Virus record (IMG/VR): IMGVR_UViG_3300044796_000662
Coordinates: 186,001 to 250,000 of that record
DNA length: 64,000 nt
Direction: 5' to 3' (one strand)
Position numbers and translations under genes: made by a program. Shown piece by piece: positions 2,535 to 18,051 of the stretch (positions are counted from its first letter, which is position 1; each line of letters starts with the position of its first letter). The notes beneath the pieces are model-generated. The model was not told the origin of the DNA and did no database searches. It worked only from the letters and a program-made list of their open reading frames with translations.

Positions 2535-2539
2535 AGCGC

Positions 2540-3055
2540 TCAGCCCTTCTTCTTGTGGATGCCGTGCGTGAATTCGAGGCTGCCCATACCGCCCGCCGAG
2601 GTGGACTTGATGCGGTGCTCCAGCTCATAGGGGCCCATGCCCTCCTCGTTGAGCTTCTTGGCGTCCTTGGGGTCGTAGCCGTGGGCTTCGAGGATGGCCT
2701 CAAGCTCCTTGAGTTCCCCAGGATGCGCTGCGCCTTCCGCCTGCCAGTCGGCCTTCTTGCGCTTGTTTTGTGTCTTGCCGCCAGGCCCAGCACCCCCGGG
2801 GAGCGCCGCCTTGGCCTCCTCACGCAGGTCTTGACCGACACCCGAGGGCGTCTCGCGCTCCGGCTTGGCGGTGAACGTCTTGCCCGTGTACGGAGAGCGG
2901 ACGGTCAGCTTCTTCTCCTTGAGCCAGAACTCGTTGCCCGTGGGATCCACGTACTTCCAAAGCATGCCGCCCTGGCCCTGCTTCTTGTCACCCTTGGCGA
3001 GCTTCTCGGTAAGCTCACTGGCCTGCTTCTTGAGCTGCTCTTGGATGGGGTGCAT
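2540..3055 (-). CDS. Hypothetical protein (probably virion-associated)
   Basis: Clean ORF with SD (AAGGAAG) and an upstream TTATC motif. Confidence 0.7.
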   Translation of the reverse strand: MHPIQEQLKKQASELTEKLAKGDKKQGQGGMLWKYVDPTGNEFWLKEKKLTVRSPYTGKTFTAKPERETPSGVGQDLREEAKAALPGGAGPGGKTQNKRKKADWQAEGAAHPGELKELEAILEAHGYDPKDAKKLNEEGMGPYELEHRIKSTSAGGMGSLEFTHGIHKKKG

Positions 3056-3701: not shown

Positions 3702-4211
3702 TCAACGACCCTTCTTGTTGTGGAGGGTCTGTCGGAGCTGGAGCATCACCTCACGGGTCATGCGCTCCTTGATGAACTTCTTGGCCTCTTGCTTGGCCTT
3801 CGTGATGAAGTCCACACGACCGCGGCCGGGGTGCCACCAGCTCCCGTTCTCCATCGAACGAGGCGTCGCCCAGCGGAAGATCATCTCGCCCGAGTCGAGG
3901 ACGATGGGGATCGGGACCTTCGCCTTCGTGAGCCACTTCATCTGCCTCTTCTCCTGTCCGAAGACGAGAGGCTTGAAACCGGGGTGACTGGTCGTGATGA
4001 CGAGGCTGTTCGGGAAGATCTTGATCCGGAGCGACTTCGACAGCGACTTGCGGGCGCGGTCCGAAAAGGTGGGAATGTTCTGGAACTTGGCCTTGAGGCG
4101 CCGGTTCAGCTCGGCCTTGAGCTTGCGCAGCACCCCTTCTGGGTTGACGTTGAGGTTCTCGCCGATGAGGGGTTTGGCGTAGACACCGCTGACACGCGTG
4201 GGGGCGCCCAT
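3702..4211 (-). CDS. Basic neck-region protein (possibly HK97 gp10/Ne1-like)
   Basis: ATG at 4211 coupled to upstream stop (TGATG); basic, WWHPG..DFITKA motif; follows adaptor/closure genes. Confidence 0.5.
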   Translation of the reverse strand: MGAPTRVSGVYAKPLIGENLNVNPEGVLRKLKAELNRRLKAKFQNIPTFSDRARKSLSKSLRIKIFPNSLVITTSHPGFKPLVFGQEKRQMKWLTKAKVPIPIVLDSGEMIFRWATPRSMENGSWWHPGRGRVDFITKAKQEAKKFIKERMTREVMLQLRQTLHNKKGR

Positions 4212-5575
4212 CAGTATTCCGTGTTCTCCCAAGCGTCGGTCTCTCCACGGAGCTGGCGCTCTGCGGGGATGTTGGGCTTGTTCGTGATCTCCGAGCTGGC
4301 TTCCTGGTCAGGGCCCATCGGAGCGAACTCGACGGCCGGGAACCTGACAGGATTGTCCACGGGCACCTTGTTGCGGATGTCCTTCTCGTCGAAGTGACCC
4401 ACCGTGAAGTGCTGTTGCAGGATCATGCCTCGGCTTGTAGGCATCCGAACGGCGCCGATCGAGTATCGTTCACCGTTGATCTTCACGAAGAAGTCACGGT
4501 GTGCAAGGAGCGGCGTCGGTCCCGTCCAGGACTCGTACGTGTGCTCGACCGTGCGACCGCGATCCTTCTGTGTGATGCGCTTCTCAGAGTCATCCGGCGC
4601 GATGATGATGTCGTACGGTCCGTCGTAGCCGCCGATGATCCCCGTACCGAAGCAGAGGGGATCGTCATTGATTGGTTGCTTGTGGATGTCGTCCTGGAAA
4701 CAAGGGCACGGCGTGCCCACCTGCTTGCGCAAGAAGACCTTCACGCGCTCGCCCGCCTGCTCAAGCAGCCAGCGGTTTCGGCGTGCGGCCTCCTTCCAGA
4801 TGTAGTCGATCTTCTCCATCTCGTAGGAGTTCGTGGCCGTCGCGTACTCCAGCGGCGTCTCCATGACCTTCTGGGACTGGACAACGCTCGTGGCGTGGTT
4901 GACGGGGATGCCCACGGTCGTGACGAGATAGAAGACCCTCTGAACGAGGTCCGTGCGCACGAGCTGCTTCGTGTACCTGTACGAGCAGGTCACGACGCTC
5001 GTTGAAGAAGGGACCACCGTGGGCAAGTAGTTCTGCGTGCCCGTGTCGGGGTAGCGCCGGACGTCGATCTCGATCTCGCCCGTCTGACCATCGACACGCA
5101 GGACCGGAACGATCTGGCCATCGACGATGACCTGCACGTCCTCGGCAGAGTTGGCGTAGACCTCCTGCGAGGCTTCCTTGACGATGGGCCGAAGCAGCGT
5201 GCGGAAGACGTAACGAGGACCATAGCCGGCCATGCCCGTGCTCTGCTCGCCGAAGATGACCCACTGTTGAGGGGTGATCTGCTCGTCGGTAACGAGGACG
5301 TTGTTGGTCTGATCGCGCCAGTAGCGAGACCCGATGGGCAGGCTGTTCACGCGCTCGAACGGTCCGAACTCCGAGTCGAACGCACGGTAGATGTTGACCC
5401 CCAAGATGGAGAACCGACCGTTGAGGGTCAGGATCCCGGGGCTGTCCCACGTGAGGTCGAACACACCAGGCCGGTACCCACTCCTCACGAAGAAGTTGAG
5501 GGGTGAGACCGGCCACGGAGCCCGGACGTACTCCAGCTCACTGGGGTTCCGGTCGCGATTACTTGCATAAGGCAT
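4211..5575 (-). CDS. Head-closure/neck protein with N-terminal Fn3-like region and Cys motif
   Basis: GERVKVFLRK...CPC...CFGTGIIGGYDGP motif; LTWDSP...GVNIYRA Fn3-like start; directly after adaptor. Confidence 0.55.
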   Translation of the reverse strand: MPYASNRDRNPSELEYVRAPWPVSPLNFFVRSGYRPGVFDLTWDSPGILTLNGRFSILGVNIYRAFDSEFGPFERVNSLPIGSRYWRDQTNNVLVTDEQITPQQWVIFGEQSTGMAGYGPRYVFRTLLRPIVKEASQEVYANSAEDVQVIVDGQIVPVLRVDGQTGEIEIDVRRYPDTGTQNYLPTVVPSSTSVVTCSYRYTKQLVRTDLVQRVFYLVTTVGIPVNHATSVVQSQKVMETPLEYATATNSYEMEKIDYIWKEAARRNRWLLEQAGERVKVFLRKQVGTPCPCFQDDIHKQPINDDPLCFGTGIIGGYDGPYDIIIAPDDSEKRITQKDRGRTVEHTYESWTGPTPLLAHRDFFVKINGERYSIGAVRMPTSRGMILQQHFTVGHFDEKDIRNKVPVDNPVRFPAVEFAPMGPDQEASSEITNKPNIPAERQLRGETDAWENTEY

Positions 5576-5985: not shown

Positions 5986-6903
5986 TCAGAAGCCGACGAA
6001 CTTGCGAGGAGAGAGCACACCTCGGCCGGCGTACGGACCGAATGCCGAACGGATGCCGGTACCAAACTTGGGCTGCTGGACGCCCTTGATGTAGTTGACG
6101 GTCGCCTTGCCCTTTTCGAGCTGCGTCTGGAAGTGCTCACTGGCGGCTTGCTGAGCGCCTTCGTACTTGGCGGCCTTCTCCAGGTTGAGCGAGACACCGC
6201 CGATGCTGTAGTCGAACTCGTCGGCGATCCAGTTGATGCGCATGGCCTGGAGCGCGTAGTACGTCGCGCCCGTCAAGAGCATCGTCCTCCACTCGGGATG
6301 GAGCTGCACCATCTGAGCGATGTTGGCGAAGGGAGTCTTGGGGGGCGCCGCGATGATGTCGTCGAGCGCGTTGTACATGTACTCGACCAGCTCGTGGTCC
6401 TCCCAGATGAAGCCGAAGACCTTGCTGAACTGCGTAACCGTCTCTTCGTGGGCCGGCGGACGGAAGTGGTAGTTGCGGTCGGGGTTGTTGTCGCGGAGCA
6501 GGTTGCGCAAGCGGCGCATGAGTTCCCGCTCGTGGTGGTCCATCTCGCCACCCTCACCCCCACCGGGGCCGAACCCACCCGGTTGGACCCGGTCGATGAC
6601 CGCGAAGTTCATGACGACCTGTTGCAGCGGCCCTCCGACGACCTCACGGAAGGTCCAGCGGATGCGGTAGGCACCGATGTTGGCGTCAAGCGGGATGAGC
6701 AGGCTCGCGTAGTATTCCCCGACAGACGGGTTCACGGGCACACGCATGCTCGGACCGACGAGGACTTCGCTGCCGGTCGTGAAGTCGTAGAGGGCGTAGC
6801 TGATCTCGGCGGCGTTGACGGGCGTGCCGTTGACGTTCGTCAGGTAGATGTTGAGGTCGTTCCTGCCGAGGAGCTGACCCTTGTAGAATGCGGTGGTTGC
6901 CAT
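5986..6903 (-). CDS. Head-tail adaptor/neck protein with N-terminal Ig-like domain
   Basis: LRNLLRD...IWEDHELVEY..ALDDI...DYSIGGVSL resembles adaptor (Ad1/gp6-like) pattern; N-terminal beta-sandwich. Confidence 0.55.
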   Translation of the reverse strand: MATTAFYKGQLLGRNDLNIYLTNVNGTPVNAAEISYALYDFTTGSEVLVGPSMRVPVNPSVGEYYASLLIPLDANIGAYRIRWTFREVVGGPLQQVVMNFAVIDRVQPGGFGPGGGEGGEMDHHERELMRRLRNLLRDNNPDRNYHFRPPAHEETVTQFSKVFGFIWEDHELVEYMYNALDDIIAAPPKTPFANIAQMVQLHPEWRTMLLTGATYYALQAMRINWIADEFDYSIGGVSLNLEKAAKYEGAQQAASEHFQTQLEKGKATVNYIKGVQQPKFGTGIRSAFGPYAGRGVLSPRKFVGF

Positions 6904-6906: not shown

Positions 6907-9900
6907 TCAGTCCCATCCGCGCTTGCGGCCTCGTGGCGTCTTGTCGTCGGGGAAGTGCGCCGAGACGGCGTCGAGCACCTCGAAGTAGTAGTCCTTCGTG
7001 AAGGACTGGCTAAAGAAGGTTTCTTGAACGGTCCAGCGGACCATCCAGATGCCCGGCTGGCCACCTTCGCCAACGACACCCGTGACGTAGAAGTGTCCCA
7101 CACCGGGGCCGTGCGCCGGCTCGCGAGCGTCGGGCCCGACCGGCATGAGGAACATGTCCTTCACCTGGTAGAGGGCGAACGTGACCTTGTAGGGTTCGAC
7201 CGGGTGACGGCGCTTGTCGTCGTCCTTCTCGTAGACGTAGAGCGGCAGATGGTGCGGCTCGAAGAACGTGGCCCAGTACGGGAACGCGACGAGCCGCGAG
7301 GTCGTGCGAGTCCTGAGGATGGGCGGCAGAACCGGGGCTTGGTAGTTGTAGCCCGCGATGATCGCGCTGATCGGCGGTAGCGAGACGTACTGCGCCGGCG
7401 GCTGGACGTAGATGAAGGCGTTCTGCGAGGGAACACCGTAGCCCGCGAAGATCGAATCTTGGGGCGGGAGGTCTGCAACCGGGGGGAGAGCCGCAGGAAT
7501 GATCTGCGCGTTCTGTGGTGGGAACCCGAAGCCCGCGAAGAGGTACTGCGGGGGCGGGAGGTCCGGAACGAGCGGGGCCGGGATCGTCGGGATGATCTGC
7601 GGTGCTTGCGCCGCCTGGCCGTAGCCGACCACCAGCTCCGGGATCACAGTGGGGTACGGAGCGCGAGCGTCGTACGCCTGGAAGAGCTGTGCGACCTGTG
7701 CAGGGAAGCCGAACCCAGGGATGACGTACTGAGGCGGCGGAAGATCCGGTACGAGCGGGGGCGGTACCGCAGGGATGATCTGAGCAACCTGTGCTGCCTG
7801 CCCGTAGCCTGCCAGCACGTAGTCCGTAGGCGGCAAGAGCGCAGCGGGGGCGGGCACGCCGATGTAGATGGCGGGGTTCTGCGCGGCCTGTCCGAAGCCT
7901 GCGAAGAGGCTGTCGAGCGGGGGCAGAGGGACGTAGTCTGCGGGGGCTGCCTTCGAGATGAAGGGCGCCTGAGCGGCCTGCCCGTAGCCCGCGAACAGGT
8001 AGTCCGTGGGCGGGAGCTGCACGTAGGGGGACGGCGGGGGCAGCGAGAAGACCACTGCGGACTGCGCGGCCGTTCCAGCACCACCCGTGAGAGCACCACC
8101 GGACGTCGCATAGAAGGCCGGCGGCGGATCACCCGAGCTGAGGAGCAGCGGCGGCGGGATGAGGTAGTACGCGTGCGGGGCGACGGGCGGAGCGATGATG
8201 ATCTGCGCGTTCTGCGCGGCCTGACCGTAGCCCTTGAGGACGTAGTCCTGAGGGGGGAGCTGAGCACTCGGCGGGAGAACGAAAGGTTGGAACAGCTCGG
8301 GGCTCTGCGCTGCCTGGCCGTGTCCTGCGAAGACTGCGTCCTCCGGAGGGAGCTGGGTGAACGGTGGCACGAGTGGCTGCGTGTAGACCACGGCCTTCTG
8401 AGGCGGGAACCCGAAGCCAGCGAAGATGGAGTCCAGCGGAGGCAGTGCAGCGCTCGGCGGGAGAACGAACGGCTGGTAGAGAGCGGCGTTCTGAGCCGGA
8501 CGTCCAAAGCCCGCGTAGATGCTCTGTGGGGGCGGCAGCACCTCGGTTGGAGGCAGCACGAACGGCTGGACGAGGGTCGGTGCCTGCGCCGCCTGACCGA
8601 AGCCCTTGAGGATGTAGTCGGTCGGAGGCAGTGCAGCGAACGGCGGGACGAGCGGCTGCGTGTAGATTGCCGGGTTCTGTGGCGGGTAGCCGAAGCCCGC
8701 GAAGATCGAGTCCTCGGGCGGCAGGACAGCCGAGGGCGGCAGCAACGTGGGCTGCACGAAGAACGGCGCTTCGGCGGGCTTGCCGTACCCCGCATAGATG
8801 TAGTCCTGCGGCGGGAGTACCTCGGTCGGAGGCAGGATCGTCGCCTGAACATGGAAGGGTGCTTCCGCGGCCTGGCCGTACCCGGCGAACACGTAGTCCT
8901 GCGGAGGCAGATTGGCGCTTGGGGGAAGCAACGTGGGCTGCACGAAAAAGGGCACTTCGGCGGCCTGCCCGTAGCCTGCAAAGATCGAATCCAGCGGGGG
9001 AAGAGCAGCCGAGGGCGGAAGAACGAACGGCTGGAACAGCGCTGCGACCTGTGCAGGCTTGCCGTAACCGGCGTAGATGCTCTGCGGCGGAGGCAGGGCA
9101 GCCGAGGGCGGTAGGACGAACGGCTGTACGAAGAACGGTGCCTGAGCAGCCTGACCATACCCAGCGTAGACGTAGTCTTGCGGAGGCAGGTTCGCAGCGG
9201 GCGGCGGAACCCCAATGATCTGGACCGCCACTTGTGCAGGCTTGCCGAAGCCTGCGAAGATCGAATCCTCGGGCGGCAGGGCCACGTACGGGGGCTGCGG
9301 TTGCAAAGTGAAGGGGATGTTCGAGAGGCTGGGGGTTCCGTAGCCCGCGAAGATCGAGTCCTCCGGGGGCAAGATCGCGCTGGGGGCCGGGAAGAGCGAA
9401 GGGTAGAAGACCTCGGCGATCTGCGCAGCTTGACCGTAGCCGGTGACCACGTAGTCCTGCGGAGGCAGCGTCGCGCTCGGAGCAACGAGCGGTTGGGAGA
9501 TGGTGAACGCGTTGAGCGAAGGCTTGCCGTACCCTGCAACGAGGAAGGTGGGAGGGGGCAGGAGTGCAGACGGCGGCAGGACAAACGGCTGGAAGAGCGC
9601 TGCGTTCTGTGCCGGTTGACCGAACCCGGCGAAGATGCTTTGGGGTGGGGGCAGATCCGGAACCCTGGGCGGCGGGATCGCAGGGAGGATCTGTGCGACT
9701 TGAGCCGGCTGACCATACCCAATGAAGATCGAGTCCTCCGGGGGCAGAACCGCGAAGGGTGGGATCTGCGCCGGAACAACGGACGGGGCTTGTGTTGCCT
9801 GACCGAAGCCCTTGAGGATGTAGTCTTGCGGCGGAAGCTGAACGTAGGGGGCGGGGGGCTGTACCAGGAGTTGGGCGACCTGCGAGGGTTGACCGTATCC

Positions 9901-12900
9901 AGCGAAGATCGAGTCGAGCGGCGGGAGCGTTGCCGAAGGTGGGATCTGCGCCGGGACGATGAACGGCACTTGTGCCGCCTGTCCGAAGCCCGTGTAGATG
10001 TAGTCGGTAGGCGGGAGGATCGCGCTCGGAGCAGGAACCCCAATGAACGTGGCCGCTGCCTGTGCAGCTTGACCAAAGCCAGCGTACACGGACGTGGGAG
10101 GGGGCAGAGCAGGAACAACTGGCGGCGGAATCGCAGGAATGATCTGCGCGGCCTGCGTCGGGAAGCCGAATCCCGCGAAGACGTAATCGGTCGGCGGGAG
10201 CTGTGCGCTCGGCGGGAGGATCGTCGGCTGGACGAAGAACGGTGCCTGCGAAGGCTGGCCGTACCCCGCATAGACAGAGTCGAGAGGAGGCAGGCTCGCA
10301 TTCGGCGGGAGTACGAAGGGCTGAACGAGCTGTGCGTTCTGAGCAGGCTGGCCGTACCCAGCGTACACGTAGTCCGTGGGAGGGAGCAGAGGTACGAATG
10401 GCGGCGGTGTTCCAACGAAGGTCGCTGGGGCCTGAGCTGCCTGACCGAAGCCCGCGTACACGTAGTCCGTGGGCGGAAGCAGCGGCACGAAGGGGGGCGG
10501 AACCGCAGGGATGATCTGCGCCGTCTGCGAAGGTTGGCCGTATCCCTTGAGGACGTAGTCAGTTGGCGGAAGCAGCGCGAGTTGAGGGAGGTTGAACGGC
10601 TGGTACAGCGCTGCGTTCTGCGGGGGTTGGCCGTATCCTGCCAACACATAGTCGGTGGGCGGTAGCTGCGCGTTCGGCGGAAGCACAAACGGTTGAACGA
10701 AGAACGGCGCTTCTGCGGGTTGACCGTACCCGGCCAGCACGTAGTCGGTCGGAGGAAGCACCGCGGACGGCGGCAAGACCACCGGCTGGACGAGAGATGC
10801 ATTCTGGGAGGGTTGGCCGTATCCCGTAAGAACCGCGTCAAGCGGAGGCAGGATCGCGCTCGGCGGGATCACGAACGGCTGCACGAGCTGCGCGTTTTGC
10901 GAGGGTTGGCCAGCACCCGTGTTGGTCTGCCCGCCGAACGCGCCCGTGATGCCGATGGGCTCCCCGTTCTCAATCGCCTGGAAGAGCGGCAAGTCCGCTA
11001 CTAGGGGCGGGAGGAACGAGTTGCCATAGACGTACCCCACGAGCGGATTGGCGCCCTGTCCGAGAGCGCCGCCCGAAGTGGCGTTGAACGTACCACCATC
11101 CGAGATGTACACGGTAGGCGGTTTGGTACGGTAACGCTCTGCCGGAGCCTCGATGTCGAACTCCGTGAAGGTGATGACAGGAGGTTGTGCGGCTTGGCCG
11201 GCACCTTGACCAAGAGCACCGCCTGAGGTGGGGTTGAAGGACCCACCGTCCGAGATGTACACGTGCGGCGGCTTCCCACGGCCACGCAGCGCCTCCGCGT
11301 CGATGTCCAACTCACTGTAGAGGGTAATGGGCGAAGGAGGCGGCCCCGGCTGGCCGTACCCAGTGTTGGTCTGCCCTCCGAACGCACCCGTGATGCCGTT
11401 GGGTTCACCGTTCTCAAGAGCCTGGAACGGAGGCAGGTCGGCACGGATCTGATTGAAGATCTGCTCCTGCGCGTTGAGGTTGATGGTCGTCGCAAGCCCC
11501 AGGGGCTTGAATGCGGCAACCGCAGCGCTCCAGTTGTAGCTCGACGTGAACGTACAGCCTGGCGAGTAGGTGCCAGGGGCGCCCGCGAGCTGGTCTTGCT
11601 CCATCGCTGCGCCGGAGTTGAAGTTGTACCTGGTGATCGCACCGCCCGTGGGCACGTAGCCGGTGCTAGACCCGTTCGTCTCGATGACCGTGAACAGGAG
11701 GTCCGTGCCTACCGTTGTCGTGATCGGCACTGACACGGAGGTGCTTGCAGTGGTGCCGATCGCGGTCGCCACATCAAGGGGATCCGACGTGTTCTGGACA
11801 CCGGAGTATTCCACCACACTGAGTTCGTAGTAGTTGGATCCACCCCAAGTCGCGGTGACGGCGTTGCTAGCGTGGGCAGCGATGTTCCAAGCGTAGTAGA
11901 TAGCGACGATACCCCCAGGACTGACCACTGCCGAGTGGTACACGTTGCCAGCGGTATCAGTGACCGAGATGGGACCACCAGTGGGCGAGAACACCGCCGC
12001 CACAAGCAGGTTGCCCGCTGTGTTCGAGCCGGTGAACGTAGCCGTGACGCTGGTACCTGGGGCGACGTTGTTGCTCGCCACCTGGACGTACGTGGGAGCC
12101 GTGATGCCGGGGTTTCCCGCGATGCTCAACGAACCAAACTGACCACTGATGTTGAGGTACCCCGTAAGGGTAACAACATCGAGTCCCTTCAAGATCGTTT
12201 GCTGCGTTGGGGGAAGCCCCCACGGCTGCATCGCGGGGGACAGGACATCCAAGGGGCTCGCGTAGATGGTCCCCTTCGCCGGCACGATAGAACCGGCCCC
12301 TGCGTGGAGAGCTATGCTGTAGGGCAGCACCTCGGGAGCCTTGAAGGGCGATGAGTGCGAGACGTACGCGACGCCTGGCGATTGACCGTACCCGGCCTTG
12401 ACGCCTGTTGTCGCCGGAAGCTGTGGCGACTCGCTAACCGAGGGTCTGGTGATTGTGTTGATGTTCGACAGACCCGCAAAGCTCTGTGCCTTGAAGGTCA
12501 CAATGCAAGAGACAACCGAACCGCCCGACGACGCGATCGTGGAAGTGCTGCTGTAGGCCCCGGTCGATGTGACTACACGATCGGCCACACCATTCCACGG
12601 ACCGTTGCCACCGAGACCTCTGGAAGTCCAAGTGGGGTCCAACGCTGAAAGGTTGTTACCCGCCCAAGCGAGCCAGTTGAACAGAAGCTCGGTGGCTTGG
12701 GTTGTTGTGGGGGTAGGACCCGTTGTGAAGCTCGTACCAGACGAACCCGTGTAGGTATCGACAGAAACGTCTGGACCAGCAAGCCCGCTGTACTCCAAGG
12801 CCCACACGTAGAAGCTCTGCATGCCTCCCGTGGTGTACGTGACCGTGATGTGCGTGGCGCCCGCGATCGTGATCTTCGAGTAGTAGACCCCCGTCTCGTA

Positions 12901-15186
12901 CGTGCTCGCGTCGTCGAACGTGGTGAGGGCCGGATAGTACGAGTTGCCCTTGTCGTCGGTAACCGAGACGAAGCTTGAAGGGTACTGCCCGCTCCAGGCG
13001 ACGATCACGGTGTTGCCCACCGTGGCCGCCACGGGGAGGATGGCCGTAACGGAGGTGACCGCGGTGTAAGCCACACCCGCTACAGGGGCCTTTTGAATGA
13101 ACGTTGGGTTCGCGTACCCCAAGCCCAGTTGCTGTGTGAGTGTGCCAACAGCACCCGTGACGTTAAGGCCACCGTAGATCGGTTGGAACGAGCCACCGCT
13201 TAGCGCGCCACCTGTCGTTGGCTCGAAGGTCCCGCCGTCTGCGAGCTGCACCGCGGTCAACGAAGGCAGATCAGCGGGAGCAGGTCGCAGACGGTTGTAG
13301 ACCGAGGACTGGATAGCCGAAGGGTTGTTCCAGTAGAAGTTCGCCGCGATCATACCCCAAGAGGCGTTGCCAGCGAGCGTAACTCCCGCGCTGTTGGTAC
13401 CGATCGTCGCACCGATGTCATCTTCAATGATCTGGTCGAAAATAGAAGTGACCAGGCGTTGCGTGTACCCAGAACCGGGCGTCGTCGTCGGTTGCGAGCC
13501 GCTCCACCCGGTAGCGATGATGGCGCCGAGCTTGCTGGTCGTGAAGTTGCCCGTGGATGGCGTGGAGGTGAACAACGAGTTCGTGCTCGTGTCCATCGCC
13601 GCGCCCGTATCGTAGGCGTTGATGCCCGAATACTCGGCCGCGATCACGGTCATCGCGTTGACGTTGGTCGTGGTGAAAGCGACGCTGACCTGATTGCCCG
13701 AGCCGCCCGTGATGCCGAAGGCAACGTAGACGGCCATCGACACGGCGCTGTAGCCGCTGCTCGCCGTGCCCGCCCAGCTCAAGACCTGTGTGTAGGAGTT
13801 CCCTTGGGTATCGGTCACGCCCGTGCCCGGGAAGCCGTTGGCCGGATAGACCATGCCGCACATGACGAAGACCACGATGGCGTTACCCGCGGTGTTCGCC
13901 GATCCGAAGGCTGCCGTCGTCGCTGGGCTTGCAACGCTACCGCCGGGCTCTTCGAGATACGCTCCCTGTTTGAACGTGACGGCCGGAACCGACACGGGAG
14001 TGCCCGACAGGACCATGGTCCCGAGGTTGCCCGTGACATTCAGGAGGCTGAATATGTTGGACGGAACGCCAAGCGTCGTCTGGCCACCAAAAGCACCCGT
14101 GATGCCCGTTTGATTGGCGTGCTGAAGGGTTTGGAACGGAGGCAGGTCCGGAACCACCGGAGGCAAGAAGATGTTGTCGATCTCGTATCCGATGGTGAGC
14201 GGAGGCGGCGGGGTAAACGGACCCGGCGCGACTTGACCGCCAAAGGCGCCCGTGATCCCGTTGTTGTGGCCCGTAGGGATCGCCTGAAACGGCGGCAACA
14301 ACATCACATCGGTCGTAGGCGCGGCCGAAGCTTCCAGGGCGTTGATGACCGATTCGTCCTGTGCTGCGTAGAACCCCGCCGCGACGATCCCCCAGGTCTG
14401 AGCGGTCATGGTCGCAATGGCCGTCACGGACCCCGCAGCACCAAAGACCGCGTACTCCAGAATGTCTGCGTATCCGCTCGTCTTCTGAATGAGCCTGAAC
14501 CCACCACCAGCTCCCGTCGCCGAACCAGTGTTGATCGTCGCTGCGAAGACAATGCACTGGCGGTGAGCGAGGTTGAAGGGCCCAGTGGTGGCGTTTGCCG
14601 TCGTACCCGTAGCCCCAGCGCCGTTGTCGTAAGCAGTGATACCCGCGACCTCGAAGCAGTAGATGGCGGGCGAGGTCATGCTGCCCGTAGCCGTAAAAGA
14701 CACCGCGTTGGAAGCCCCGCCCACCACATTGAAGGCCACGTAAACGGCCATCTGCGTGCTGTTGGGTGTGCTCGATACGGAGGCACCCGGGCAGGCGACG
14801 TATGTGTTGCCTTGAGTGTCCGTGACCGTGTTAAACGTGACGCCCGTGGAGTTCTGGTTGGCGAGGATAACGACGATCGCTCGTCCCGGCTTGACGGTGG
14901 CTCCGAATGTTGCTGTCTGCGTAGACTCCCCGACCGCCACCTGAATGTACTGCGGCGCTTGCGCCATCGAGTTGCTGAACAGCGTCCCGATCCTGCCAGA
15001 CACGTTCAGACCCGCGAGCACCCCTAGATTGGCACCCGTGTTGACCTGGCCACCAAAGGCGCCCGTGATGCCGTTGGACTCGCCGTTATCGATCATCTGA
15101 AGCGGCGGCAAGTCCGCCGTCAAAGGAGGCAGCGAGTGCGTGTGGAACAAAGAGGTGGGCCGCAACGGCGGCGCACCGAAGCCCAC
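6907..15186 (-). CDS. Giant repetitive virion fibre/appendage-like protein (~2759 aa)
   Basis: Open frame 6907-15228; probable start GTG 15186 (GGAG 7 nt upstream). Four Thr/Ser/Gly/Ala-rich beta domains, ~38 Pro-rich repeats, C-terminal Ig-like domain. Confidence 0.8.
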   Translation of the reverse strand: MGFGAPPLRPTSLFHTHSLPPLTADLPPLQMIDNGESNGITGAFGGQVNTGANLGVLAGLNVSGRIGTLFSNSMAQAPQYIQVAVGESTQTATFGATVKPGRAIVVILANQNSTGVTFNTVTDTQGNTYVACPGASVSSTPNSTQMAVYVAFNVVGGASNAVSFTATGSMTSPAIYCFEVAGITAYDNGAGATGTTANATTGPFNLAHRQCIVFAATINTGSATGAGGGFRLIQKTSGYADILEYAVFGAAGSVTAIATMTAQTWGIVAAGFYAAQDESVINALEASAAPTTDVMLLPPFQAIPTGHNNGITGAFGGQVAPGPFTPPPPLTIGYEIDNIFLPPVVPDLPPFQTLQHANQTGITGAFGGQTTLGVPSNIFSLLNVTGNLGTMVLSGTPVSVPAVTFKQGAYLEEPGGSVASPATTAAFGSANTAGNAIVVFVMCGMVYPANGFPGTGVTDTQGNSYTQVLSWAGTASSGYSAVSMAVYVAFGITGGSGNQVSVAFTTTNVNAMTVIAAEYSGINAYDTGAAMDTSTNSLFTSTPSTGNFTTSKLGAIIATGWSGSQPTTTPGSGYTQRLVTSIFDQIIEDDIGATIGTNSAGVTLAGNASWGMIAANFYWNNPSAIQSSVYNRLRPAPADLPSLTAVQLADGGTFEPTTGGALSGGSFQPIYGGLNVTGAVGTLTQQLGLGYANPTFIQKAPVAGVAYTAVTSVTAILPVAATVGNTVIVAWSGQYPSSFVSVTDDKGNSYYPALTTFDDASTYETGVYYSKITIAGATHITVTYTTGGMQSFYVWALEYSGLAGPDVSVDTYTGSSGTSFTTGPTPTTTQATELLFNWLAWAGNNLSALDPTWTSRGLGGNGPWNGVADRVVTSTGAYSSTSTIASSGGSVVSCIVTFKAQSFAGLSNINTITRPSVSESPQLPATTGVKAGYGQSPGVAYVSHSSPFKAPEVLPYSIALHAGAGSIVPAKGTIYASPLDVLSPAMQPWGLPPTQQTILKGLDVVTLTGYLNISGQFGSLSIAGNPGITAPTYVQVASNNVAPGTSVTATFTGSNTAGNLLVAAVFSPTGGPISVTDTAGNVYHSAVVSPGGIVAIYYAWNIAAHASNAVTATWGGSNYYELSVVEYSGVQNTSDPLDVATAIGTTASTSVSVPITTTVGTDLLFTVIETNGSSTGYVPTGGAITRYNFNSGAAMEQDQLAGAPGTYSPGCTFTSSYNWSAAVAAFKPLGLATTINLNAQEQIFNQIRADLPPFQALENGEPNGITGAFGGQTNTGYGQPGPPPSPITLYSELDIDAEALRGRGKPPHVYISDGGSFNPTSGGALGQGAGQAAQPPVITFTEFDIEAPAERYRTKPPTVYISDGGTFNATSGGALGQGANPLVGYVYGNSFLPPLVADLPLFQAIENGEPIGITGAFGGQTNTGAGQPSQNAQLVQPFVIPPSAILPPLDAVLTGYGQPSQNASLVQPVVLPPSAVLPPTDYVLAGYGQPAEAPFFVQPFVLPPNAQLPPTDYVLAGYGQPPQNAALYQPFNLPQLALLPPTDYVLKGYGQPSQTAQIIPAVPPPFVPLLPPTDYVYAGFGQAAQAPATFVGTPPPFVPLLPPTDYVYAGYGQPAQNAQLVQPFVLPPNASLPPLDSVYAGYGQPSQAPFFVQPTILPPSAQLPPTDYVFAGFGFPTQAAQIIPAIPPPVVPALPPPTSVYAGFGQAAQAAATFIGVPAPSAILPPTDYIYTGFGQAAQVPFIVPAQIPPSATLPPLDSIFAGYGQPSQVAQLLVQPPAPYVQLPPQDYILKGFGQATQAPSVVPAQIPPFAVLPPEDSIFIGYGQPAQVAQILPAIPPPRVPDLPPPQSIFAGFGQPAQNAALFQPFVLPPSALLPPPTFLVAGYGKPSLNAFTISQPLVAPSATLPPQDYVVTGYGQAAQIAEVFYPSLFPAPSAILPPEDSIFAGYGTPSLSNIPFTLQPQPPYVALPPEDSIFAGFGKPAQVAVQIIGVPPPAANLPPQDYVYAGYGQAAQAPFFVQPFVLPPSAALPPPQSIYAGYGKPAQVAALFQPFVLPPSAALPPLDSIFAGYGQAAEVPFFVQPTLLPPSANLPPQDYVFAGYGQAAEAPFHVQATILPPTEVLPPQDYIYAGYGKPAEAPFFVQPTLLPPSAVLPPEDSIFAGFGYPPQNPAIYTQPLVPPFAALPPTDYILKGFGQAAQAPTLVQPFVLPPTEVLPPPQSIYAGFGRPAQNAALYQPFVLPPSAALPPLDSIFAGFGFPPQKAVVYTQPLVPPFTQLPPEDAVFAGHGQAAQSPELFQPFVLPPSAQLPPQDYVLKGYGQAAQNAQIIIAPPVAPHAYYLIPPPLLLSSGDPPPAFYATSGGALTGGAGTAAQSAVVFSLPPPSPYVQLPPTDYLFAGYGQAAQAPFISKAAPADYVPLPPLDSLFAGFGQAAQNPAIYIGVPAPAALLPPTDYVLAGYGQAAQVAQIIPAVPPPLVPDLPPPQYVIPGFGFPAQVAQLFQAYDARAPYPTVIPELVVGYGQAAQAPQIIPTIPAPLVPDLPPPQYLFAGFGFPPQNAQIIPAALPPVADLPPQDSIFAGYGVPSQNAFIYVQPPAQYVSLPPISAIIAGYNYQAPVLPPILRTRTTSRLVAFPYWATFFEPHHLPLYVYEKDDDKRRHPVEPYKVTFALYQVKDMFLMPVGPDAREPAHGPGVGHFYVTGVVGEGGQPGIWMVRWTVQETFFSQSFTKDYYFEVLDAVSAHFPDDKTPRGRKRGWD
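7354..10917 (-). repeat. Coding tandem repeat, ~38 units of 30-32 aa (~93 bp): G[YF]GQ[PA][AS]Q-x10-PP-x3-LPPxD[YS][IV][FY]A
   Basis: Units counted by hand in the translated ORF. Confidence 0.9.
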
Positions 15187-15514
15187 GCCCGGACTCCGCG
15201 ATCGTCTCGAACGATACTTCGAACGCATGACGAGCGTGGACGGCCTTGTCGTAGGCTTCCTTCGCCATGTTGAGGGCGATCTCGACGTCCTGGAAGAGCG
15301 AGCGTCGGTTGGCTTCGGCCTTCGCTGCCGAGAAGTCTTCGTTGTTCCAGGTGTTGTCCGCCTGGCGCTGCACCGTCTCGACGAGGGCCTTGTCGAACTC
15401 GGGCACTTCCCCCTTCATGTACTGGAGGTAGTTGTGCAGGAGTCCGAGCACCTCAAGGGAAACACTCGGAGGGTCCTCGGGAGGACGATTGACGAGGTTG
15501 CTCATGGTGACCAT
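15086..15514 (-). CDS. Hypothetical protein (accessory, probably leaderless)
   Basis: CGGTGTAG motif 9 nt upstream of ATG; 3' end overlaps start of the giant gene. Confidence 0.6.
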   Translation of the reverse strand: MVTMSNLVNRPPEDPPSVSLEVLGLLHNYLQYMKGEVPEFDKALVETVQRQADNTWNNEDFSAAKAEANRRSLFQDVEIALNMAKEAYDKAVHARHAFEVSFETIAESGRGLRCAAVAAHLFVPHALAASFDGGLAAASDDR

Positions 15515-15523
15515 GCCCGCCTT

Positions 15524-15531
15524 CTACACCG
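15524..15531 (-). promoter_or_regulatory. CGGTGTAG candidate promoter element
   Basis: Intergenic, 9 nt before ATG 15514; same motif at 26035, 26796, 28027, 55880. Confidence 0.65.
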
Positions 15532-15548
15532 CGATGGGCCCAAGCGGC

Positions 15549-15878
15549 TCAAGTTTTCTTCGCCTGGGACAGCGCCTCGAACTCGCTCATGGGCCGCTCG
15601 AAGAAGCAGAGCCGTTTGGCCCCGCTCTCGTCCGCGAGGGAGACGCCGCGGATGTAGTGCTGGACGCCCTTGTCATCGGGCCACAGGGGAAGAGGGCACT
15701 CGTCTACCCAGAAGAGCGCTCCTGAGGCCAGAACGATGAGGTATTCCTCAGGCTCCGCCCCAACCGCCGTCGTCGTCGCCTTCGTCACGGTCTTGACCGG
15801 GATAGCGTCGGTGATGCCCTGGTCCGGAGTCGTGCCATTCGTCATCGTGCCGTTCGTCGTCTTCATCTTGGTGCTCAT
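15549..15878 (-). CDS. Hypothetical protein
   Basis: Typical codon usage; overlaps 3' end of upstream ORF by 131 bp. Confidence 0.6.
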   Translation of the reverse strand: MSTKMKTTNGTMTNGTTPDQGITDAIPVKTVTKATTTAVGAEPEEYLIVLASGALFWVDECPLPLWPDDKGVQHYIRGVSLADESGAKRLCFFERPMSEFEALSQAKKT

Positions 15879-16350
15879 TTTCGAACTGCTCGTATTGCTC
15901 TCGACGGTAGATCTCGTCGAATCGAACCCAGACCCTCATCCACGGTTCCCGAGGGTTGTAGCGTAGGTAGCGCAGCCGTACCCCGCCACCACGGTACCCA
16001 TCATGGCAGTGACAGCCGCACTCGTGATGGCAGTGCGGCCGACAGATGGGACAGGGTACATGGACAAGATCTGCGAAGCCCGCAAGGATGCCTACACCAA
16101 TCGCTGGGAGCGGGACTGAAGCGATCAAGTCGCCGTGCCCCGAAACCCGGCTTCCAAGGAGGTGTATCTCCTTGACGACCTGCCCGTAGAAGGTCGCCGC
16201 TCCCGCAGCCGTGCCCCCAGCGAGAAACTGGTAGTCATAGGCAAGGGTTCCCACGCCGGCTGCGCGGCCGGTCATGAGGACCACATTTTGCGTGGAGCCC
16301 GTCAGGGTACCAACGCCACTGGCCTTGCCGGAGACGTTGAGGGTCGCCAT
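15748..16350 (-). CDS. Gly/Ala-rich virion accessory protein with Cys/His cluster
   Basis: GxAxGxGTL repeats, then CPICRPHCHHECGCHCHD. Confidence 0.6.
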   Translation of the reverse strand: MATLNVSGKASGVGTLTGSTQNVVLMTGRAAGVGTLAYDYQFLAGGTAAGAATFYGQVVKEIHLLGSRVSGHGDLIASVPLPAIGVGILAGFADLVHVPCPICRPHCHHECGCHCHDGYRGGGVRLRYLRYNPREPWMRVWVRFDEIYRREQYEQFENEHQDEDDERHDDEWHDSGPGHHRRYPGQDRDEGDDDGGWGGA

Positions 16351-16361
16351 CCGCTACCCCG

Positions 16362-16745
16362 TCAGGTTTCGGTGACGATGAGCTGTCCCGTGGGGAACAC
16401 GATCTGGTCGTTGACAAGAACGACGCGAGACGAACTCAGGGAGCTGAAGTAGAGAAGGTTGCCGCCCGACACGGAGTCAAGGAGGCCGAACGCTACAATC
16501 GTACCCCAAGAGCTGCTAGCGATGGGGAAAGAGACCGTCGTAGCGTTGTTCGTCTGCCCGTTGGTGGGAGAGACGAAGGTCACGGTCTGACGAGCGTAGC
16601 TGCCGCCCGTGACCTCAGTGCCCGAGGTGGTCGGTGTGGGGGACACCGTGTAGAGGGCCACGTAGATGGTCGTGGGCGCGACGAATACGCCGTTGAGCAG
16701 CACGTAGTTGAGGACGTTGTTGTCGAGGTACGTGCTCTTCGGCAT
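16362..16745 (-). CDS. Small virion/tail-fibre-associated beta protein (paralogue of 17641-18051)
   Basis: YVALYT..PT...GTEVTGGSYARQ.VTF...FP.A...WGTIVAFGL.D...GGNLLYF, a common phage structural family. Confidence 0.75.
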   Translation of the reverse strand: MPKSTYLDNNVLNYVLLNGVFVAPTTIYVALYTVSPTPTTSGTEVTGGSYARQTVTFVSPTNGQTNNATTVSFPIASSSWGTIVAFGLLDSVSGGNLLYFSSLSSSRVVLVNDQIVFPTGQLIVTET

Positions 16746-16749
16746 GGTC

Positions 16750-17145
16750 TTACCGAGGGGGCTTCATAAACGAAGCAACGAGGCCCGGAGTGGGCGTGGA
16801 GAGATTGTTGACCACGTCGTAGTCCTGCGCCTGAATCTGCGGGACTGACGTGTACGTGAGAATCACCCGCCAGTACCCCACGCCGATCGGCCGAAACCGA
16901 ACATTGTAGAACCCAGCGCTGCCCGGGATCTCGTTGAAGTACACGTTGCCAGACGCGACCTGCGCGTCAGGGACAGTCGTGCCATCCACAAGGCCCCACG
17001 GCTGGATAGCGTTGTTGAAGAAGAGCTGAAGGGTGAGCTGGCTTGGCGTCAGACCCGAAAGGCGTGTGAAGCCGTCCGACTGGAAGAAGTCGGGCTGGTC
17101 GATCACCGTCGCGTTGTTCTGAACGATCCTGCCACGCGTGCTCAT
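16750..17145 (-). CDS. Ig-like virion accessory protein
   Basis: EIPGSAGFYNVRFRPIGVGYWRVILTY beta-sandwich pattern. Confidence 0.6.
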   Translation of the reverse strand: MSTRGRIVQNNATVIDQPDFFQSDGFTRLSGLTPSQLTLQLFFNNAIQPWGLVDGTTVPDAQVASGNVYFNEIPGSAGFYNVRFRPIGVGYWRVILTYTSVPQIQAQDYDVVNNLSTPTPGLVASFMKPPR

Positions 17146-17148
17146 GGC

Positions 17149-17322
17149 TCACGGCCTCCGCATAGGGCGGAACACAACGACTTCCTCGGGCGCCGGCTGG
17201 TTGGCCAGCTCGGGCGGCGGATGCTTGCGCTTGATGTTGGCCCCAAGAGAGAAGGCCATCGACGCCCGGGTGTCCGTGGAAGCAGTCGCGATGAGGTTGG
17301 CCGAGAGCTGAATCTCGGCCAT
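17149..17322 (-). CDS. Small hypothetical protein (57 aa)
   Basis: Below ORF-track cutoff; MAEIQLSANLIATASTDTRASMAFSLGANIKRKHPP...RPMRRP* exactly fills the gap. Confidence 0.65.
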   Translation of the reverse strand: MAEIQLSANLIATASTDTRASMAFSLGANIKRKHPPPELANQPAPEEVVVFRPMRRP

Positions 17323-17323
17323 C

Positions 17324-17623
17324 TCAGGTCTTCCGGGTCGGGATGCTGAGCTGCTGCGGGAAGGTGGGCTGGGCGATGACCCGAAGAGGGGTCGCCGTAA
17401 GCACCACAGGCGGAAGCGGAGTCACGTGGTGCGCAACCGACATGAACACCGGCCCAAAGTAGGCTTCTGCCGAGATGTGTGCGATCTCCCCTGCCTTGTC
17501 GGAGAGAGACGCGCCCACGCTGGCGCTCGCAGAAACGGTGGAGTGGAGCGCGAAGTGCTCCGTGGCCCCCGCCGTAACGGTGGCCCCGGCGATGATGGTC
17601 GAGGCGATGAAGTAGGCGGTCAC
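17324..17623 (-). CDS. Ala/Ser-rich virion accessory protein
   Basis: Repetitive A/S/T pattern; between structural genes. Confidence 0.6.
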   Translation of the reverse strand: MTAYFIASTIIAGATVTAGATEHFALHSTVSASASVGASLSDKAGEIAHISAEAYFGPVFMSVAHHVTPLPPVVLTATPLRVIAQPTFPQQLSIPTRKT

Positions 17624-17640: not shown

Positions 17641-18051
17641 TCACTGCTCAGTGACGGAGAGCGAGGTACCCGCGAAGGAGACCGTGTCTCCGGAGCCGAC
17701 CGTCTTCGAAGACGTCAGGTTGCCGAAGTAGAGGATCGTCGAGTCAGGCGAGCCCGAGGCCGTCGCAGCGTTGCAGATGGCGCACGCCACGATGGTGCCC
17801 CATCCCGCGCCCGTCGCGGTCGGGAACGTGACCGTACCCGAGTTCGAGGTGCTGCCTCCCGAGGGAGCCGAGAACGTCACGGCCGTGCGGGCGTAGCCCG
17901 TACCCGAAGACGTGACCTCAGTGCCCGAGGTGGTCGGCGTCGGAGCGACCGTGTAGAGGGCCACGTAGACCGTCGAGGTGGACGTGTACGTACCGTTGGT
18001 CAGAAGCAACGCGAGCATCGCGTTGTCGAGGATCTGGGACTTGGCGGCCAT
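17641..18051 (-). CDS. Small virion/tail-fibre-associated beta protein (paralogue of 16362-16745)
   Basis: YVALYTVAPTPTTSGTEVT..GYARTAVTF...FPTAT..WGTIVA; SD and TTTATG upstream. Confidence 0.75.
   Translation of the reverse strand: MAAKSQILDNAMLALLLTNGTYTSTSTVYVALYTVAPTPTTSGTEVTSSGTGYARTAVTFSAPSGGSTSNSGTVTFPTATGAGWGTIVACAICNAATASGSPDSTILYFGNLTSSKTVGSGDTVSFAGTSLSVTEQ

What the first reader, a model, noticed from the sequence alone, without database searches (positions are those of the whole stretch)
7354..10917. ~38 copies of an unfamiliar 31-aa Pro-rich G[YF]G repeat
Seen: about 1190 aa of G[YF]GQxAQ...PP...LPPxDxxxA units, almost free of Lys/Arg, with sub-types (VQPFVLPPSA; IIPAxPPPxVP; YTQPLVPPF) interleaved as if shuffled by recombination. 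Not collagen (no Gly-X-Y) and not coiled coil. I do not recognise the family. Inference: a new fibrous fold (polyproline-II/beta-turn shaft) or an elastomeric, sticker-spacer polymer forming a long whisker or coat.
Basis: partly seen in the sequence, partly recalled or inferred. Interest (0 to 1): 0.65.

Follow-up and report, generated by a model that had tools for sequence, protein, structure and literature searches.

The report
Giant proline-rich phage fibre protein
A huge soil or peat phage encodes a 2,729-residue virion fibre protein whose 1,190-residue middle is about 38 copies of a previously undescribed 31-residue proline-rich unit, which may be a "rope" that strings small fibre subunits into a roughly 100-nm appendage.

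Summary
Window 7354-10917 (- strand) encodes about 38 tandem units of 30-32 aa, G[YF]GQ...LPP.D. They lie inside one ORF (6907-15228; the likely start is M45 at 15096, giving 2,729 aa).

The array is not an assembly artefact:
- The units are only 56% alike as DNA.
- Independent records and contigs from other runs agree, with no indels.

No Pfam, NCBIfam, PHROGs or PDB family matches. A unit profile found only 13 true relatives among 1.84 billion representative proteins. All the relatives whose contigs I looked up lie on phage-like contigs.

The record is a phage of at least 363 kb, distantly related to the Acidobacteriota jumbo phage Tunturi 5.

The protein has three parts:
- Four CBM-like double beta-sandwich modules at the N-terminus.
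- The repeat stalk.
- A C-terminal domain homologous to the N-terminus of the next gene, a homologue of a "head-tail connector" protein.

In two distant relatives the C-terminus is instead a GP4 gp77 fibre-tail adaptor domain. The record's only two Gp80 genes (chain-like-fibre subunits) lie 1-3 kb upstream.

Best reading (confidence 0.4): a virion fibre anchored by its C-terminus, in which the 31-aa units are serial docking sites for Gp80 dimers. The fold itself remains unresolved, because the AF2 monomer model had low confidence and the trimer job gave no answer.

The parts
6907..15096 (-). Giant fibre gene of 2,729 aa, counted from M45. The ORF stays open upstream to 15228 (P0001, 2,773 aa).
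   Evidence: P0002, from a 570-kb contig, equals P0001 from residue 45. The upstream ORF 15086-15514 ends 9 nt before M45.
7354..10917 (-). Array of about 38 units of 30-32 aa, G[YF]GQ(A/P)AQ..hydrophobic..PP.A.LPP.D(Y/S)hhA (aa 1438-2625).
   Evidence: TRF finds a 93-bp period.
7990..8232 (-). Interruption of the array (aa 2333-2413): a truncated unit plus a long-form unit containing 'FYATSGGALTGGAGTAAQ'.
6910..7353 (-). C-terminal non-repeat region (aa 2626-2773). The core beta domain spans about aa 2645-2765 and is the putative virion anchor.
   Evidence: It is 58% identical to the C-terminus of P0003. It is homologous to the N-terminal ~105 aa of the next gene, P0041 (BLASTP E 4e-8; alignment A6). 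AF2 predicts 5 beta strands at pLDDT 50-70. No fold match was found.
10918..11442 (-). Long-form units and linkers (aa 1263-1437): 'DLPPFQ..NGITGAFGGQ' and 'DGG[ST]FN.TSGGALGQGAGQ'.
   Evidence: The same motifs separate the N-terminal modules and form the 44-46-aa units of P0003 and P0004.
11443..12156 (-). Beta-sandwich module 4 (aa 1025-1262).
   Evidence: AF2 model with pLDDT 90.8, all-beta, two sandwiches. The same fold recurs (TM 0.74-0.82) as an accessory domain of secreted bacterial enzymes and as stand-alone viral proteins. PDB matches are generic only, Z <= 6.9.
12454..13167 (-). Beta-sandwich module 3 (aa 688-925).
   Evidence: Paralogue of module 4. It is 34% identical to the single module of P0003.
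13309..14043 (-). Beta-sandwich module 2 (aa 396-640).
   Evidence: Modules 1-2 are 51% identical to the P0004 modules.
14329..15009 (-). Beta-sandwich module 1 (aa 74-300).
5986..6903 (-). Next gene downstream (P0041, 305 aa): homologue of the Tunturi 5 gp319 'head-tail connector protein'. Its N-terminal domain is a paralogue of the fibre's C-terminal domain.
   Evidence: It is 81% identical to its counterpart in L003.
4211..5575 (-). Homologue of the Tunturi 5 gp322 'minor tail protein' (454 aa).
   Evidence: It is 80% identical to its counterpart in L003.
16362..16745 (-). Gp80-type chain-like-fibre subunit, paralogue 1 (127 aa).
   Evidence: Pfam PF23140, E 5.8e-39. PDB 8JOU chain a, E 6e-11.
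17641..18051 (-). Gp80-type chain-like-fibre subunit, paralogue 2 (136 aa).
   Evidence: Pfam PF23140, E 8.9e-30. These are the only two Gp80 matches in the 363-kb record.

Best explanation
The ORF encodes a giant fibre (whisker) of the virion of a huge soil or peat myovirus-like phage.

Inferred orientation:
- The C-terminal beta domain anchors the protein at the neck or tail junction.
- The four N-terminal CBM-like beta-sandwich modules are the distal, glycan-binding end.

Inferred role of the array: the 38 x 31-aa units are not a self-folding shaft. They act as a 'rope', in which each unit is a docking site that folds only when a dimer of the Gp80-type subunits encoded just upstream binds it by beta-sheet augmentation. 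This is how the chain-like fibres of podophages GP4 and A1002 are built. At about 27 A per site the array would give a beaded fibre of roughly 100 nm.

What is shown: the repeat, its conservation, the domain architecture, the gene context and the homologies.

What is inferred: virion location, orientation, and above all the docking of Gp80 on the units.
For: Phage and structural context:
- The record is a phage of at least 363 kb.
- The window carries the major capsid protein, protease, portal and large terminase genes.
- The next genes downstream are homologues of the Tunturi 5 'head-tail connector' and 'minor tail protein'. In Tunturi 5 these sit beside the tail terminator and sheath genes.

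C-terminus as anchor:
- The C-terminal domain is homologous to the N-terminal domain of that connector homologue.
- It is conserved at 58% with P0003, whereas the array is 37% identical and the N-terminal part is rearranged.
- Family members P0039 and P0040 carry the GP4 gp77 fibre-tail adaptor domain in the same position, above Pfam's cut-off.

Distal binding end:
- The module fold recurs in secreted carbohydrate-active enzymes.
- Homologues are fused to fn3 and Ig domains.
- In relatives, a glycosidase or beta-propeller gene abuts the 5' end.
- The gene is a mosaic that evolves fast beside neighbours that are 80% identical.

Rope reading:
- The only two Gp80 genes of the record lie 1.1-2.8 kb upstream on the same strand. 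L003 also has two.
- In A1002, 11 dimers sit on about 331 rope residues. That is about 30 aa and about 27 A per dimer, and each dimer augments a beta-sheet with the rope (PMC13730344).
- Unit length is quantised here at 31 aa, or at 44-46 aa in relatives.
- The array is hydrophobic and nearly uncharged, yet it has no predicted fold in isolation.
- Proteins encoded next to Gp80 genes in GP4 and SP-15 are also periodic, with z of 5.1 and 3.0.
Against: - No direct evidence places the protein in the virion.
- No Gp80 homologue was found within +-10 kb of the family members in L004-L009, and none is listed at L013-L016. Co-occurrence therefore holds only for the two closest relatives.
- The unit profile matches no PDB chain, which should include the GP4 (8JOU) entry. 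I do not know whether A1002's entries are in that copy, or whether the GP4 rope was deposited with its sequence.
- GP4's probable rope, gp79, is Gly/Ala-rich with a 20-aa period, not Pro-rich. Its identity as the rope is my inference.
- 'Head-tail connector' in Tunturi 5 is an automatic, structure-based (Phold) annotation.
- The baseplate J gene lies 47 kb away.
Confidence: 0.4

Rival explanations
1. The array is a self-standing shaft. It folds by itself, probably as a homotrimer, into a new beta/PPII fibrous fold. This would be analogous in principle to the adenovirus triple beta-spiral or to phage fibre shafts, and would hold the binding modules away from the virion.
For: - Strict length quantisation and invariant G1, G3 and L23-P24-P25 across proteins only 34-37% identical.
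- Two Pro-free hydrophobic segments per unit that could form beta strands.
- The composition falls on the 'folded' side of the charge-hydropathy plot.
- Most family members have no Gp80 gene nearby.
- Phage fibres are typically trimeric (general knowledge).
Against: - AF2 with a 24-row alignment gives pLDDT of about 30 and no secondary structure for 7 units.
- No structural support of any kind was obtained.
- Pro occurs every 3-10 residues.
Confidence: 0.25
2. The array is a flexible tether. It is intrinsically disordered or elastomeric (PPII-rich, with G[YF]G 'stickers') and acts as a long entropic leash or fuzzy coat for the binding modules.
For: - Very low AF2 confidence and no secondary structure.
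- 21% Pro and low sequence complexity.
- G[YF]GQ resembles motifs of low-complexity and elastomeric proteins (own knowledge).
Against: - 33% L/V/I/F/Y and about 5% charged residues, which is unlike typical disordered linkers.
- 2P+G = 0.48, below the ~0.6 line that I recall for elastomers (the threshold is from memory of Rauscher et al. 2006).
- Unit lengths fall in discrete classes and indels are rare, which would be unexpected for a disordered spacer.
Confidence: 0.2
3. The protein is not a virion component. It is an intracellular scaffold or condensate former, for example one linked to the nearby actin-like (Volactin) gene.
For: - A Volactin-family gene lies 5 kb downstream in both the window and L003.
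- Aromatic G[YF]G motifs are present.
Against: - The flanking genes are neck, tail and fibre homologues.
- Relatives carry Gp77 adaptor domains.
- The modules resemble extracellular carbohydrate-binding accessory domains.
Confidence: 0.07
4. The array is an assembly artefact or a wrong reading frame.
For: - High G+C and repetitive DNA give long alternative ORFs here.
- The Logan contigs break once inside the array, at 10165-10194.
Against: - Units are only 56% alike as DNA, and the longest exact repeat is 29 nt.
- Several records and runs agree without indels.
- Homologues conserve this frame from end to end.
Confidence: 0.02

Closest known systems
Rope or fibre-dock component of chain-like tail fibres (podophage GP4 rope protein; A1002 nozzle-rope gp39; PMC13730344)
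   Same: - An extended, periodic polypeptide.
- About 30 residues per docked dimer in A1002, against 31-aa units here.
- Gp80-type subunit genes (two paralogues, as in A1002) lie next to it.
- A globular beta domain is inserted in or ends the rope.
- The Gp77 adaptor domain is fused to the same repeats in relatives P0039 and P0040.
   Different: - No detectable sequence similarity.
- 38 sites instead of 5-11.
- Pro-rich rather than Gly/Ala-rich.
- The host virus is a huge, Tunturi-5-like (myovirus-like) phage, not a podophage.
- Most relatives lack a nearby Gp80 gene.
- Docking has not been tested.
Neck whiskers and collar fibres (T4 fibritin Wac; lactococcal phage neck passage structure)
   Same: - A long appendage encoded beside neck genes.
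- It carries carbohydrate-binding modules, as the NPS does.
- Its probable role is reversible first contact with the host.
(The comparison rests on general knowledge of these systems.)
   Different: - Fibritin is an alpha-helical coiled coil anchored by its N-terminus.
- The stalk here is Pro-rich, cannot be helical, and the anchor appears to be C-terminal.
Adenovirus, reovirus and PRD1 triple beta-spiral fibre shafts
   Same: Short sequence repeats with conserved Gly/Pro turns and alternating hydrophobic residues.
   Different: - The period is about 15 residues, not 31.
- No sequence or predicted structural match.
- The oligomeric state here is unknown.
Hair-like appendages of jumbo phages (Erwinia phage Y3, Pectobacterium phage CBB, Tenacibaculum phage PTm1; PMC13282480, PMC5259590)
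   Same: Huge phages decorated with long extra fibres on the head or tail. This protein could be the gene product behind such a structure.
   Different: No sequence link was found: tblastn against 50,697 phage records gave no match.

Membership tests
Collagen-like triple helix | Gly at every third residue (Gly-X-Y). | tested here: not met
   Gly is 7.1% of the array and occupies unit positions 1 and 3 only.
Coiled-coil whisker (fibritin-like) | Long Pro-free heptad-repeat helices. | tested here: not met
   The longest Pro-free stretch per unit is about 10 residues, and AF2 predicts no helix.
Any curated family (Pfam, NCBIfam, PHROGs) or solved chain | A significant profile match to the repeat. 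| tested here: not met
   No families matched. The PDB gave E 0.44 at best with the whole protein, and nothing with the unit profile.
Chain-like-fibre rope (GP4 / A1002 type) | A periodic extended segment with one docking site per roughly 20-40 residues. | tested here: met
   The period is 31 aa. A1002 has about 331 rope residues for 11 dimers, computed from the residue ranges in PMC13730344.
Chain-like-fibre rope (GP4 / A1002 type) | Co-encoded Gp80-type fibre subunits. | tested here: inconclusive
   Two Gp80 genes lie 1-3 kb upstream here and two in L003. None lies within +-10 kb in L004-L009, and none is listed at L013-L016.
Chain-like-fibre rope (GP4 / A1002 type) | Subunit dimers dock on the rope by beta-sheet augmentation. 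| not testable with these tools
The one complex job tested a homotrimer and gave no answer.
Chain-like-fibre rope (GP4 / A1002 type) | Attachment to the tail through an adaptor or nozzle domain. | tested here: inconclusive
   P0039 and P0040 end in the Gp77 adaptor domain. P0001 ends in a domain shared with a connector homologue. G000 has no Gp77.
Chain-like-fibre rope (GP4 / A1002 type) | Sequence similarity to known rope proteins. | tested here: not met
   The unit profile gave no hit against the PDB. GP4 gp79, my candidate for its rope, has a different composition and period.
Triple beta-spiral shaft | A ~15-residue repeat forming a trimeric beta-spiral. | tested here: not met
   The period is 31 aa with no internal half-repeat. 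Trimer formation could not be established (no answer).
Elastin-like elastomer | Combined Pro and Gly content above about 2P+G = 0.6 (threshold recalled from Rauscher et al. 2006). | tested here: not met
   2P+G is 0.48 here and 0.46-0.47 in P0003 and P0004.

The most novel reading that the evidence does not exclude
The 31-aa units form a 38-site molecular rope that templates a beaded, chain-like fibre of about 100 nm from two Gp80 paralogues on a huge myovirus-like phage. This would be several times longer than the 5- and 11-dimer fibres solved in podophages. It would also represent a rope family with no sequence relation to the known ones. Alternatively, the units form a genuinely new self-standing Pro-rich fibrous fold.
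Probability: 0.4. Interest if true: 0.75.

Novelty: new variant of a known kind. Interest (0 to 1): 0.6.

Why it matters
- The genes behind the long 'hairs' and extra fibres seen on many jumbo phages are mostly unknown. This result points to a concrete and very rare protein family: 13 relatives in 1.84 billion representative proteins.
- The family has a clear modular logic. A variable anchor sits at the C-terminus, a repeat stalk of variable copy number (6 to about 47 units) in the middle, and swappable glycan-binding modules or adjacent glycosidases at the N-terminus.
- If the units are docking sites for Gp80 dimers, chain-like fibres are not a peculiarity of podophages. They would be a scalable building principle, and fibre length would be set simply by unit number.
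- If the units fold alone, they are a new fibrous fold.
- Either way the family gives a handle on host recognition by uncultivated soil phages that are probably Acidobacteriota-associated.

Tried and rejected
**Structure**
- AF2 monomer of 7 units plus the C-terminal domain: the repeats were unstructured (pLDDT ~30), so nothing is learned about their fold.
- Homotrimer job on 6 units: 'no answer' (ipSAE 0.00). This is not evidence for or against binding.
- Fold search with the low-confidence C-terminal model: only generic beta-sheet rows, Z <= 5.2, disregarded.
- Foldseek against the PDB with the N-terminal module: no clear match, TM <= 0.3.
- The wider structural search of the PDB (VIA-align) with the same module: only generic beta-sandwiches, Z <= 6.9.

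**Sequence searches with no result**
- tblastn of the whole protein against 50,697 phage records.
- Word search with the C-terminal domain among proteins of 330-1,050 aa.
- Profile of the C-terminal domains against the PDB and Pfam.
- A degenerate GFGQAAQPPVI DNA pattern found nothing in 185,579 species genomes. It found two viral contigs: L008, a further relative with the same C-terminal domain, and L009, which is P0037.

**Leads dropped**
- P0035 in the profile search is an unrelated Gram-positive-type surface repeat protein.
- The conserved 145-aa and ~150-aa proteins upstream of the gene in relatives are not detectably Gp80-like by hhalign. The 145-aa one is absent from this record; the ~150-aa one was not searched for there.
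- GP4 gp79 is not in the PDB by sequence, so its identity as the rope stays unverified. The GP4 structural paper is not held.
- The sheath family PF04984 was not found in the record.

Full report
**1. The observation**

The window holds one very long ORF on the - strand, 6907..15228 (2,773 aa, P0001).
- An identical protein called on a 569,965-bp contig starts at M45 (P0002, 2,729 aa).
- The upstream ORF ends 9 nt before that codon, so the gene is most likely 6907..15096.
- Cutting at the G-x-G marks gives 26 units of 31 aa, 9 of 30 and 1 of 32. An 81-aa stretch holds a truncated unit and a long-form unit. The total is about 38.
- Residue identity at lag 31 is 0.377, against at most 0.143 in 200 shuffles.
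- G1, G3, L23, P24 and P25 are invariant. Positions 10-12, 15-17 and 28-30 are hydrophobic.
- Composition is P 20.7%, A 14.5%, Q 9.6%, K+R 1.1% and D+E 4.1%.

**2. Not an artefact**

- As DNA the units are only 56% identical on average, 75% at most. The longest exact repeated word is 29 nt, so a k-mer assembler can resolve the array.
- A second IMG/VR record (L002) carries the gene with 31 mismatches in 8,322 nt and no length change.
- Logan contigs of a peat run cover 6907-11500 with no differences, in two contigs that meet at 10165-10194. That run may be the source sample.
- Short contigs from another peat study and from a lake study match at 99-100%. A soil run holds a diverged strain. No insertions or deletions were reported.
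- The frame is validated by homologues that keep it continuous with conserved N- and C-terminal domains.

**3. The genome**

- The window is bases 186,001-250,000 of a 362,937-bp IMG/VR record.
- It carries an HK97-type major capsid protein, a protease, a portal and a large terminase.
- It also carries a clamp loader, a 5'-3' exonuclease, a toprim protein and SbcCD-like genes.
- It is therefore a huge phage. The runs that hold it are peat, soil and lake metagenomes.
- The closest cultured relative found is the 309-kb myovirus Tunturi 5 of the acidobacterium Tunturiibacter (PMC11924767).

**4. How rare the repeat is**

- Pfam, NCBIfam, PHROGs and the PDB give nothing for the protein.
- The word search found two full-length relatives: P0003 (2,817 aa, 37% identical) and P0004 (2,398 aa, 34%).
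- A 31-column profile of 69 units (A1) was scored against 1.84 billion representative proteins. It found 14 proteins, of which 13 are convincing.
- The relatives whose contigs I looked up (P0003, P0004, P0030, P0034, P0036, P0039, P0040) lie on phage-like contigs.
- A degenerate DNA pattern of the motif hit none of 185,579 species genomes, and hit two further viral contigs.
- Unit number ranges from about 6 to about 47.
- In relatives the units are 31 aa, or 44-46 aa with a 14-aa insert at a fixed place. Length comes in discrete classes.
- Units are more alike within a protein than between proteins: 24 of 26, 14 of 14 and 13 of 15 have their best partner in the same protein. Multi-unit blocks are duplicated.

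**5. Architecture**

*N-terminal half.*
- It holds four paralogous modules of about 235 aa, each with the motifs 'LN[VI][ST]G..G[ST]L', 'TDT.GN.Y' and 'EYSG'.
- The modules are separated by long-form units such as 'DLPPFQ..NGITGAFGGQ'.
- AF2 folds module 4 confidently (pLDDT 90.8) as two beta-sandwiches.
- Solved structures give only generic sandwich matches, Z <= 6.9. These include CBMs and phage receptor-binding heads.
- In the ESM Atlas the same fold (TM 0.74-0.82 over more than 200 residues) recurs as an accessory domain of secreted bacterial enzymes. Examples are Kelch/glyoxal oxidase, purple acid phosphatase with fn3, TIG, Pel9A-like beta-helix and GH99 proteins, mostly from Acidobacteriota and Actinomycetota. 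It also occurs as stand-alone viral proteins.
- Sequence homologues are fused to fn3 and Ig domains.
- I read the modules as carbohydrate-binding-type adhesion modules. That is an inference.

*C-terminal part.*
- The last ~130 aa form a beta domain (low confidence).
- It is 58% identical to the end of P0003.
- It is homologous to the N-terminal ~105 aa of the very next gene, P0041 (E 4e-8; alignment A6).

**6. Context**

- P0041 matches the Tunturi 5 gp319 'head-tail connector protein' at 93% coverage, E 3e-16. That name comes from Phold, an automatic structure-based annotation. P0041 also matches phage G gp165.
- The 454-aa gene after it matches the Tunturi 5 'minor tail protein'. In Tunturi 5 these genes sit beside the tail terminator and sheath genes.
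- These neighbours are 80% identical between the window and L003. The fibre is 37% identical, and its N-terminal part is rearranged. Modules 1-2 are closest to P0004 (51%), while the C-terminus is closest to P0003. This is the mosaic, fast evolution typical of host-recognition proteins.
- P0004 has a different C-terminus and is not followed by a P0041 homologue.
- P0039 and P0040 end in Pfam PF23148, the gp77 fibre-tail adaptor of podophage GP4, above the curated cut-off.
- The C-terminus therefore looks like the exchangeable virion anchor, and the N-terminus like the distal end.
- In relatives, a glycan enzyme or binder gene abuts the 5' end:
  - an apiosidase-like protein in L005;
  - a GH16 protein in L013;
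  - a Kelch propeller in L007;
  - a pectin-lyase-like fragment in L006.

**7. The rope idea**

- Two ORFs upstream on the same strand, 16362-16745 and 17641-18051, are strong matches to Pfam PF23140, 'GP4 fiber I protein gp80' (E 5.8e-39 and 8.9e-30). They also match PDB 8JOU chain a at E 6e-11.
- They are the only two such genes in the 363-kb record. L003 also has two.
- According to PMC13730344, Gp80-type proteins form dimers that are strung on an extended 'rope' to give chain-like fibres:
  - five dimers on a separately encoded rope in GP4;
  - eleven dimers, of two paralogous subunits, on the fibre-dock domain of A1002 gp39;
  - each dimer forms an augmented beta-sheet with the rope.
- From the residue ranges given there (3-107 and 243-468) the A1002 rope has about 331 residues and is about 300 A long. 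That is about 30 residues and about 27 A per dimer, close to the 31-aa unit here.
- A rope would explain four things:
  - why the units are hydrophobic and nearly uncharged yet have no predicted fold alone;
  - why their length is quantised;
  - why a Gp77 adaptor domain is fused to the same repeats in P0039 and P0040;
  - why globular beta domains interrupt or end the repeats, as the Ig-like domain does in A1002.
- The protein encoded next to gp80 in GP4 (gp79) has a 20-aa period (z 5.1). The one next to the SP-15 homologue has a 40-aa period (z 3.0).
- Thirty-eight sites at about 27 A would make a fibre of roughly 100 nm.

**8. Weaknesses of the rope idea**

- No Gp80 homologue lies within +-10 kb of the other family members. 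None is listed for L013-L016.
- A conserved 145-aa protein recurs upstream in those loci, but it is not detectably Gp80-like and is absent from this record.
- The unit profile matches no solved chain.
- That gp79 is GP4's rope is my inference. It is not in the PDB by sequence, and the GP4 paper is not held.
The complex job, a homotrimer of six units, returned 'no answer' and counts for nothing either way.

**9. Rivals**

- *Self-standing oligomeric shaft with a new fold (0.25).* It is favoured by the positional conservation and by relatives without Gp80. It has no structural support.
- *Disordered or elastomeric tether (0.2).* It fits the AF2 result. It fits poorly with 33% bulky hydrophobic residues, with 2P+G = 0.48, and with discrete unit lengths.
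- *Intracellular role near the Volactin-like gene (0.07).*
- *Artefact (0.02).*

**10. Verdict**

- The repeat is real and conserved.
- It belongs to no described family, and the family it defines is very rare.
- It sits in a giant, modular phage fibre gene.
- That the protein is a virion appendage anchored by its C-terminus is well supported by context, at about 0.8.
- That the units are docking sites for Gp80 dimers is the best single mechanism I can offer, at about 0.4, and it is directly testable.
- Novelty: a new variant of a known kind (phage fibres, possibly chain-like fibres).
- Interest: 0.6.

Noticed in passing
window 698-1711 (-): A 337-aa protein matches Pfam PF25216 Volactin over its full length (E 2.5e-74). 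Volactin is an actin homologue so far described in haloarchaea (PMC10869688). Here it sits in a huge peat or soil phage, and the relative L003 has it too (L003 24466-25482).
   Followed up: partly
window 27056-29015 (-): A LAGLIDADG homing-endonuclease ORF with an HTH domain (27056-28018) lies directly downstream of the major capsid protein ORF (28134-29015; phrog_2522, E 2.5e-51). This may be an intron or a mobile insertion at the capsid gene.
   Followed up: no
whole record G000 (362,937 bp); window = 186001-250000: IMG/VR labels the record 'provirus' with 76% completeness, but the identical fibre protein is also on a 569,965-bp contig. I saw no bacterial flank in the window, so the true genome may be about 570 kb.
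   Followed up: no
L003 8844-9281, L004 9069-9506, L006 1890-2327, L007 4831-5268, L013 7819-8256: A conserved 145-aa protein (55-86% identical across distant phages) recurs a few genes upstream of the repeat protein. It is absent from this record and has no family match. It may be an alternative fibre subunit.
   Followed up: partly
window 15086-18051 (-): A run of small ORFs (142, 109/200, 127, 131, 136 aa) lies between the fibre gene and the second Gp80 paralogue. Only two of them are recognisable, as Gp80.
   Followed up: partly
L012 (Ralstonia phage GP4) 10048-11025 (-), gp79: The 325-aa protein encoded between gp80 and gp78 has about 10 G-x-G-punctuated repeats of 20 aa (z 5.1). This fits a rope for five gp80 dimers. 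It is annotated only as 'virion-associated phage protein'.
   Followed up: partly
L008 (IMGVR_UViG_3300028800_000175) 2-2725 (+): A further relative, cut at its 5' end, has at least 26 units and a C-terminal domain 69% identical to that of P0001. It is followed by a 207-aa gene and then a P0041 homologue.
   Followed up: partly
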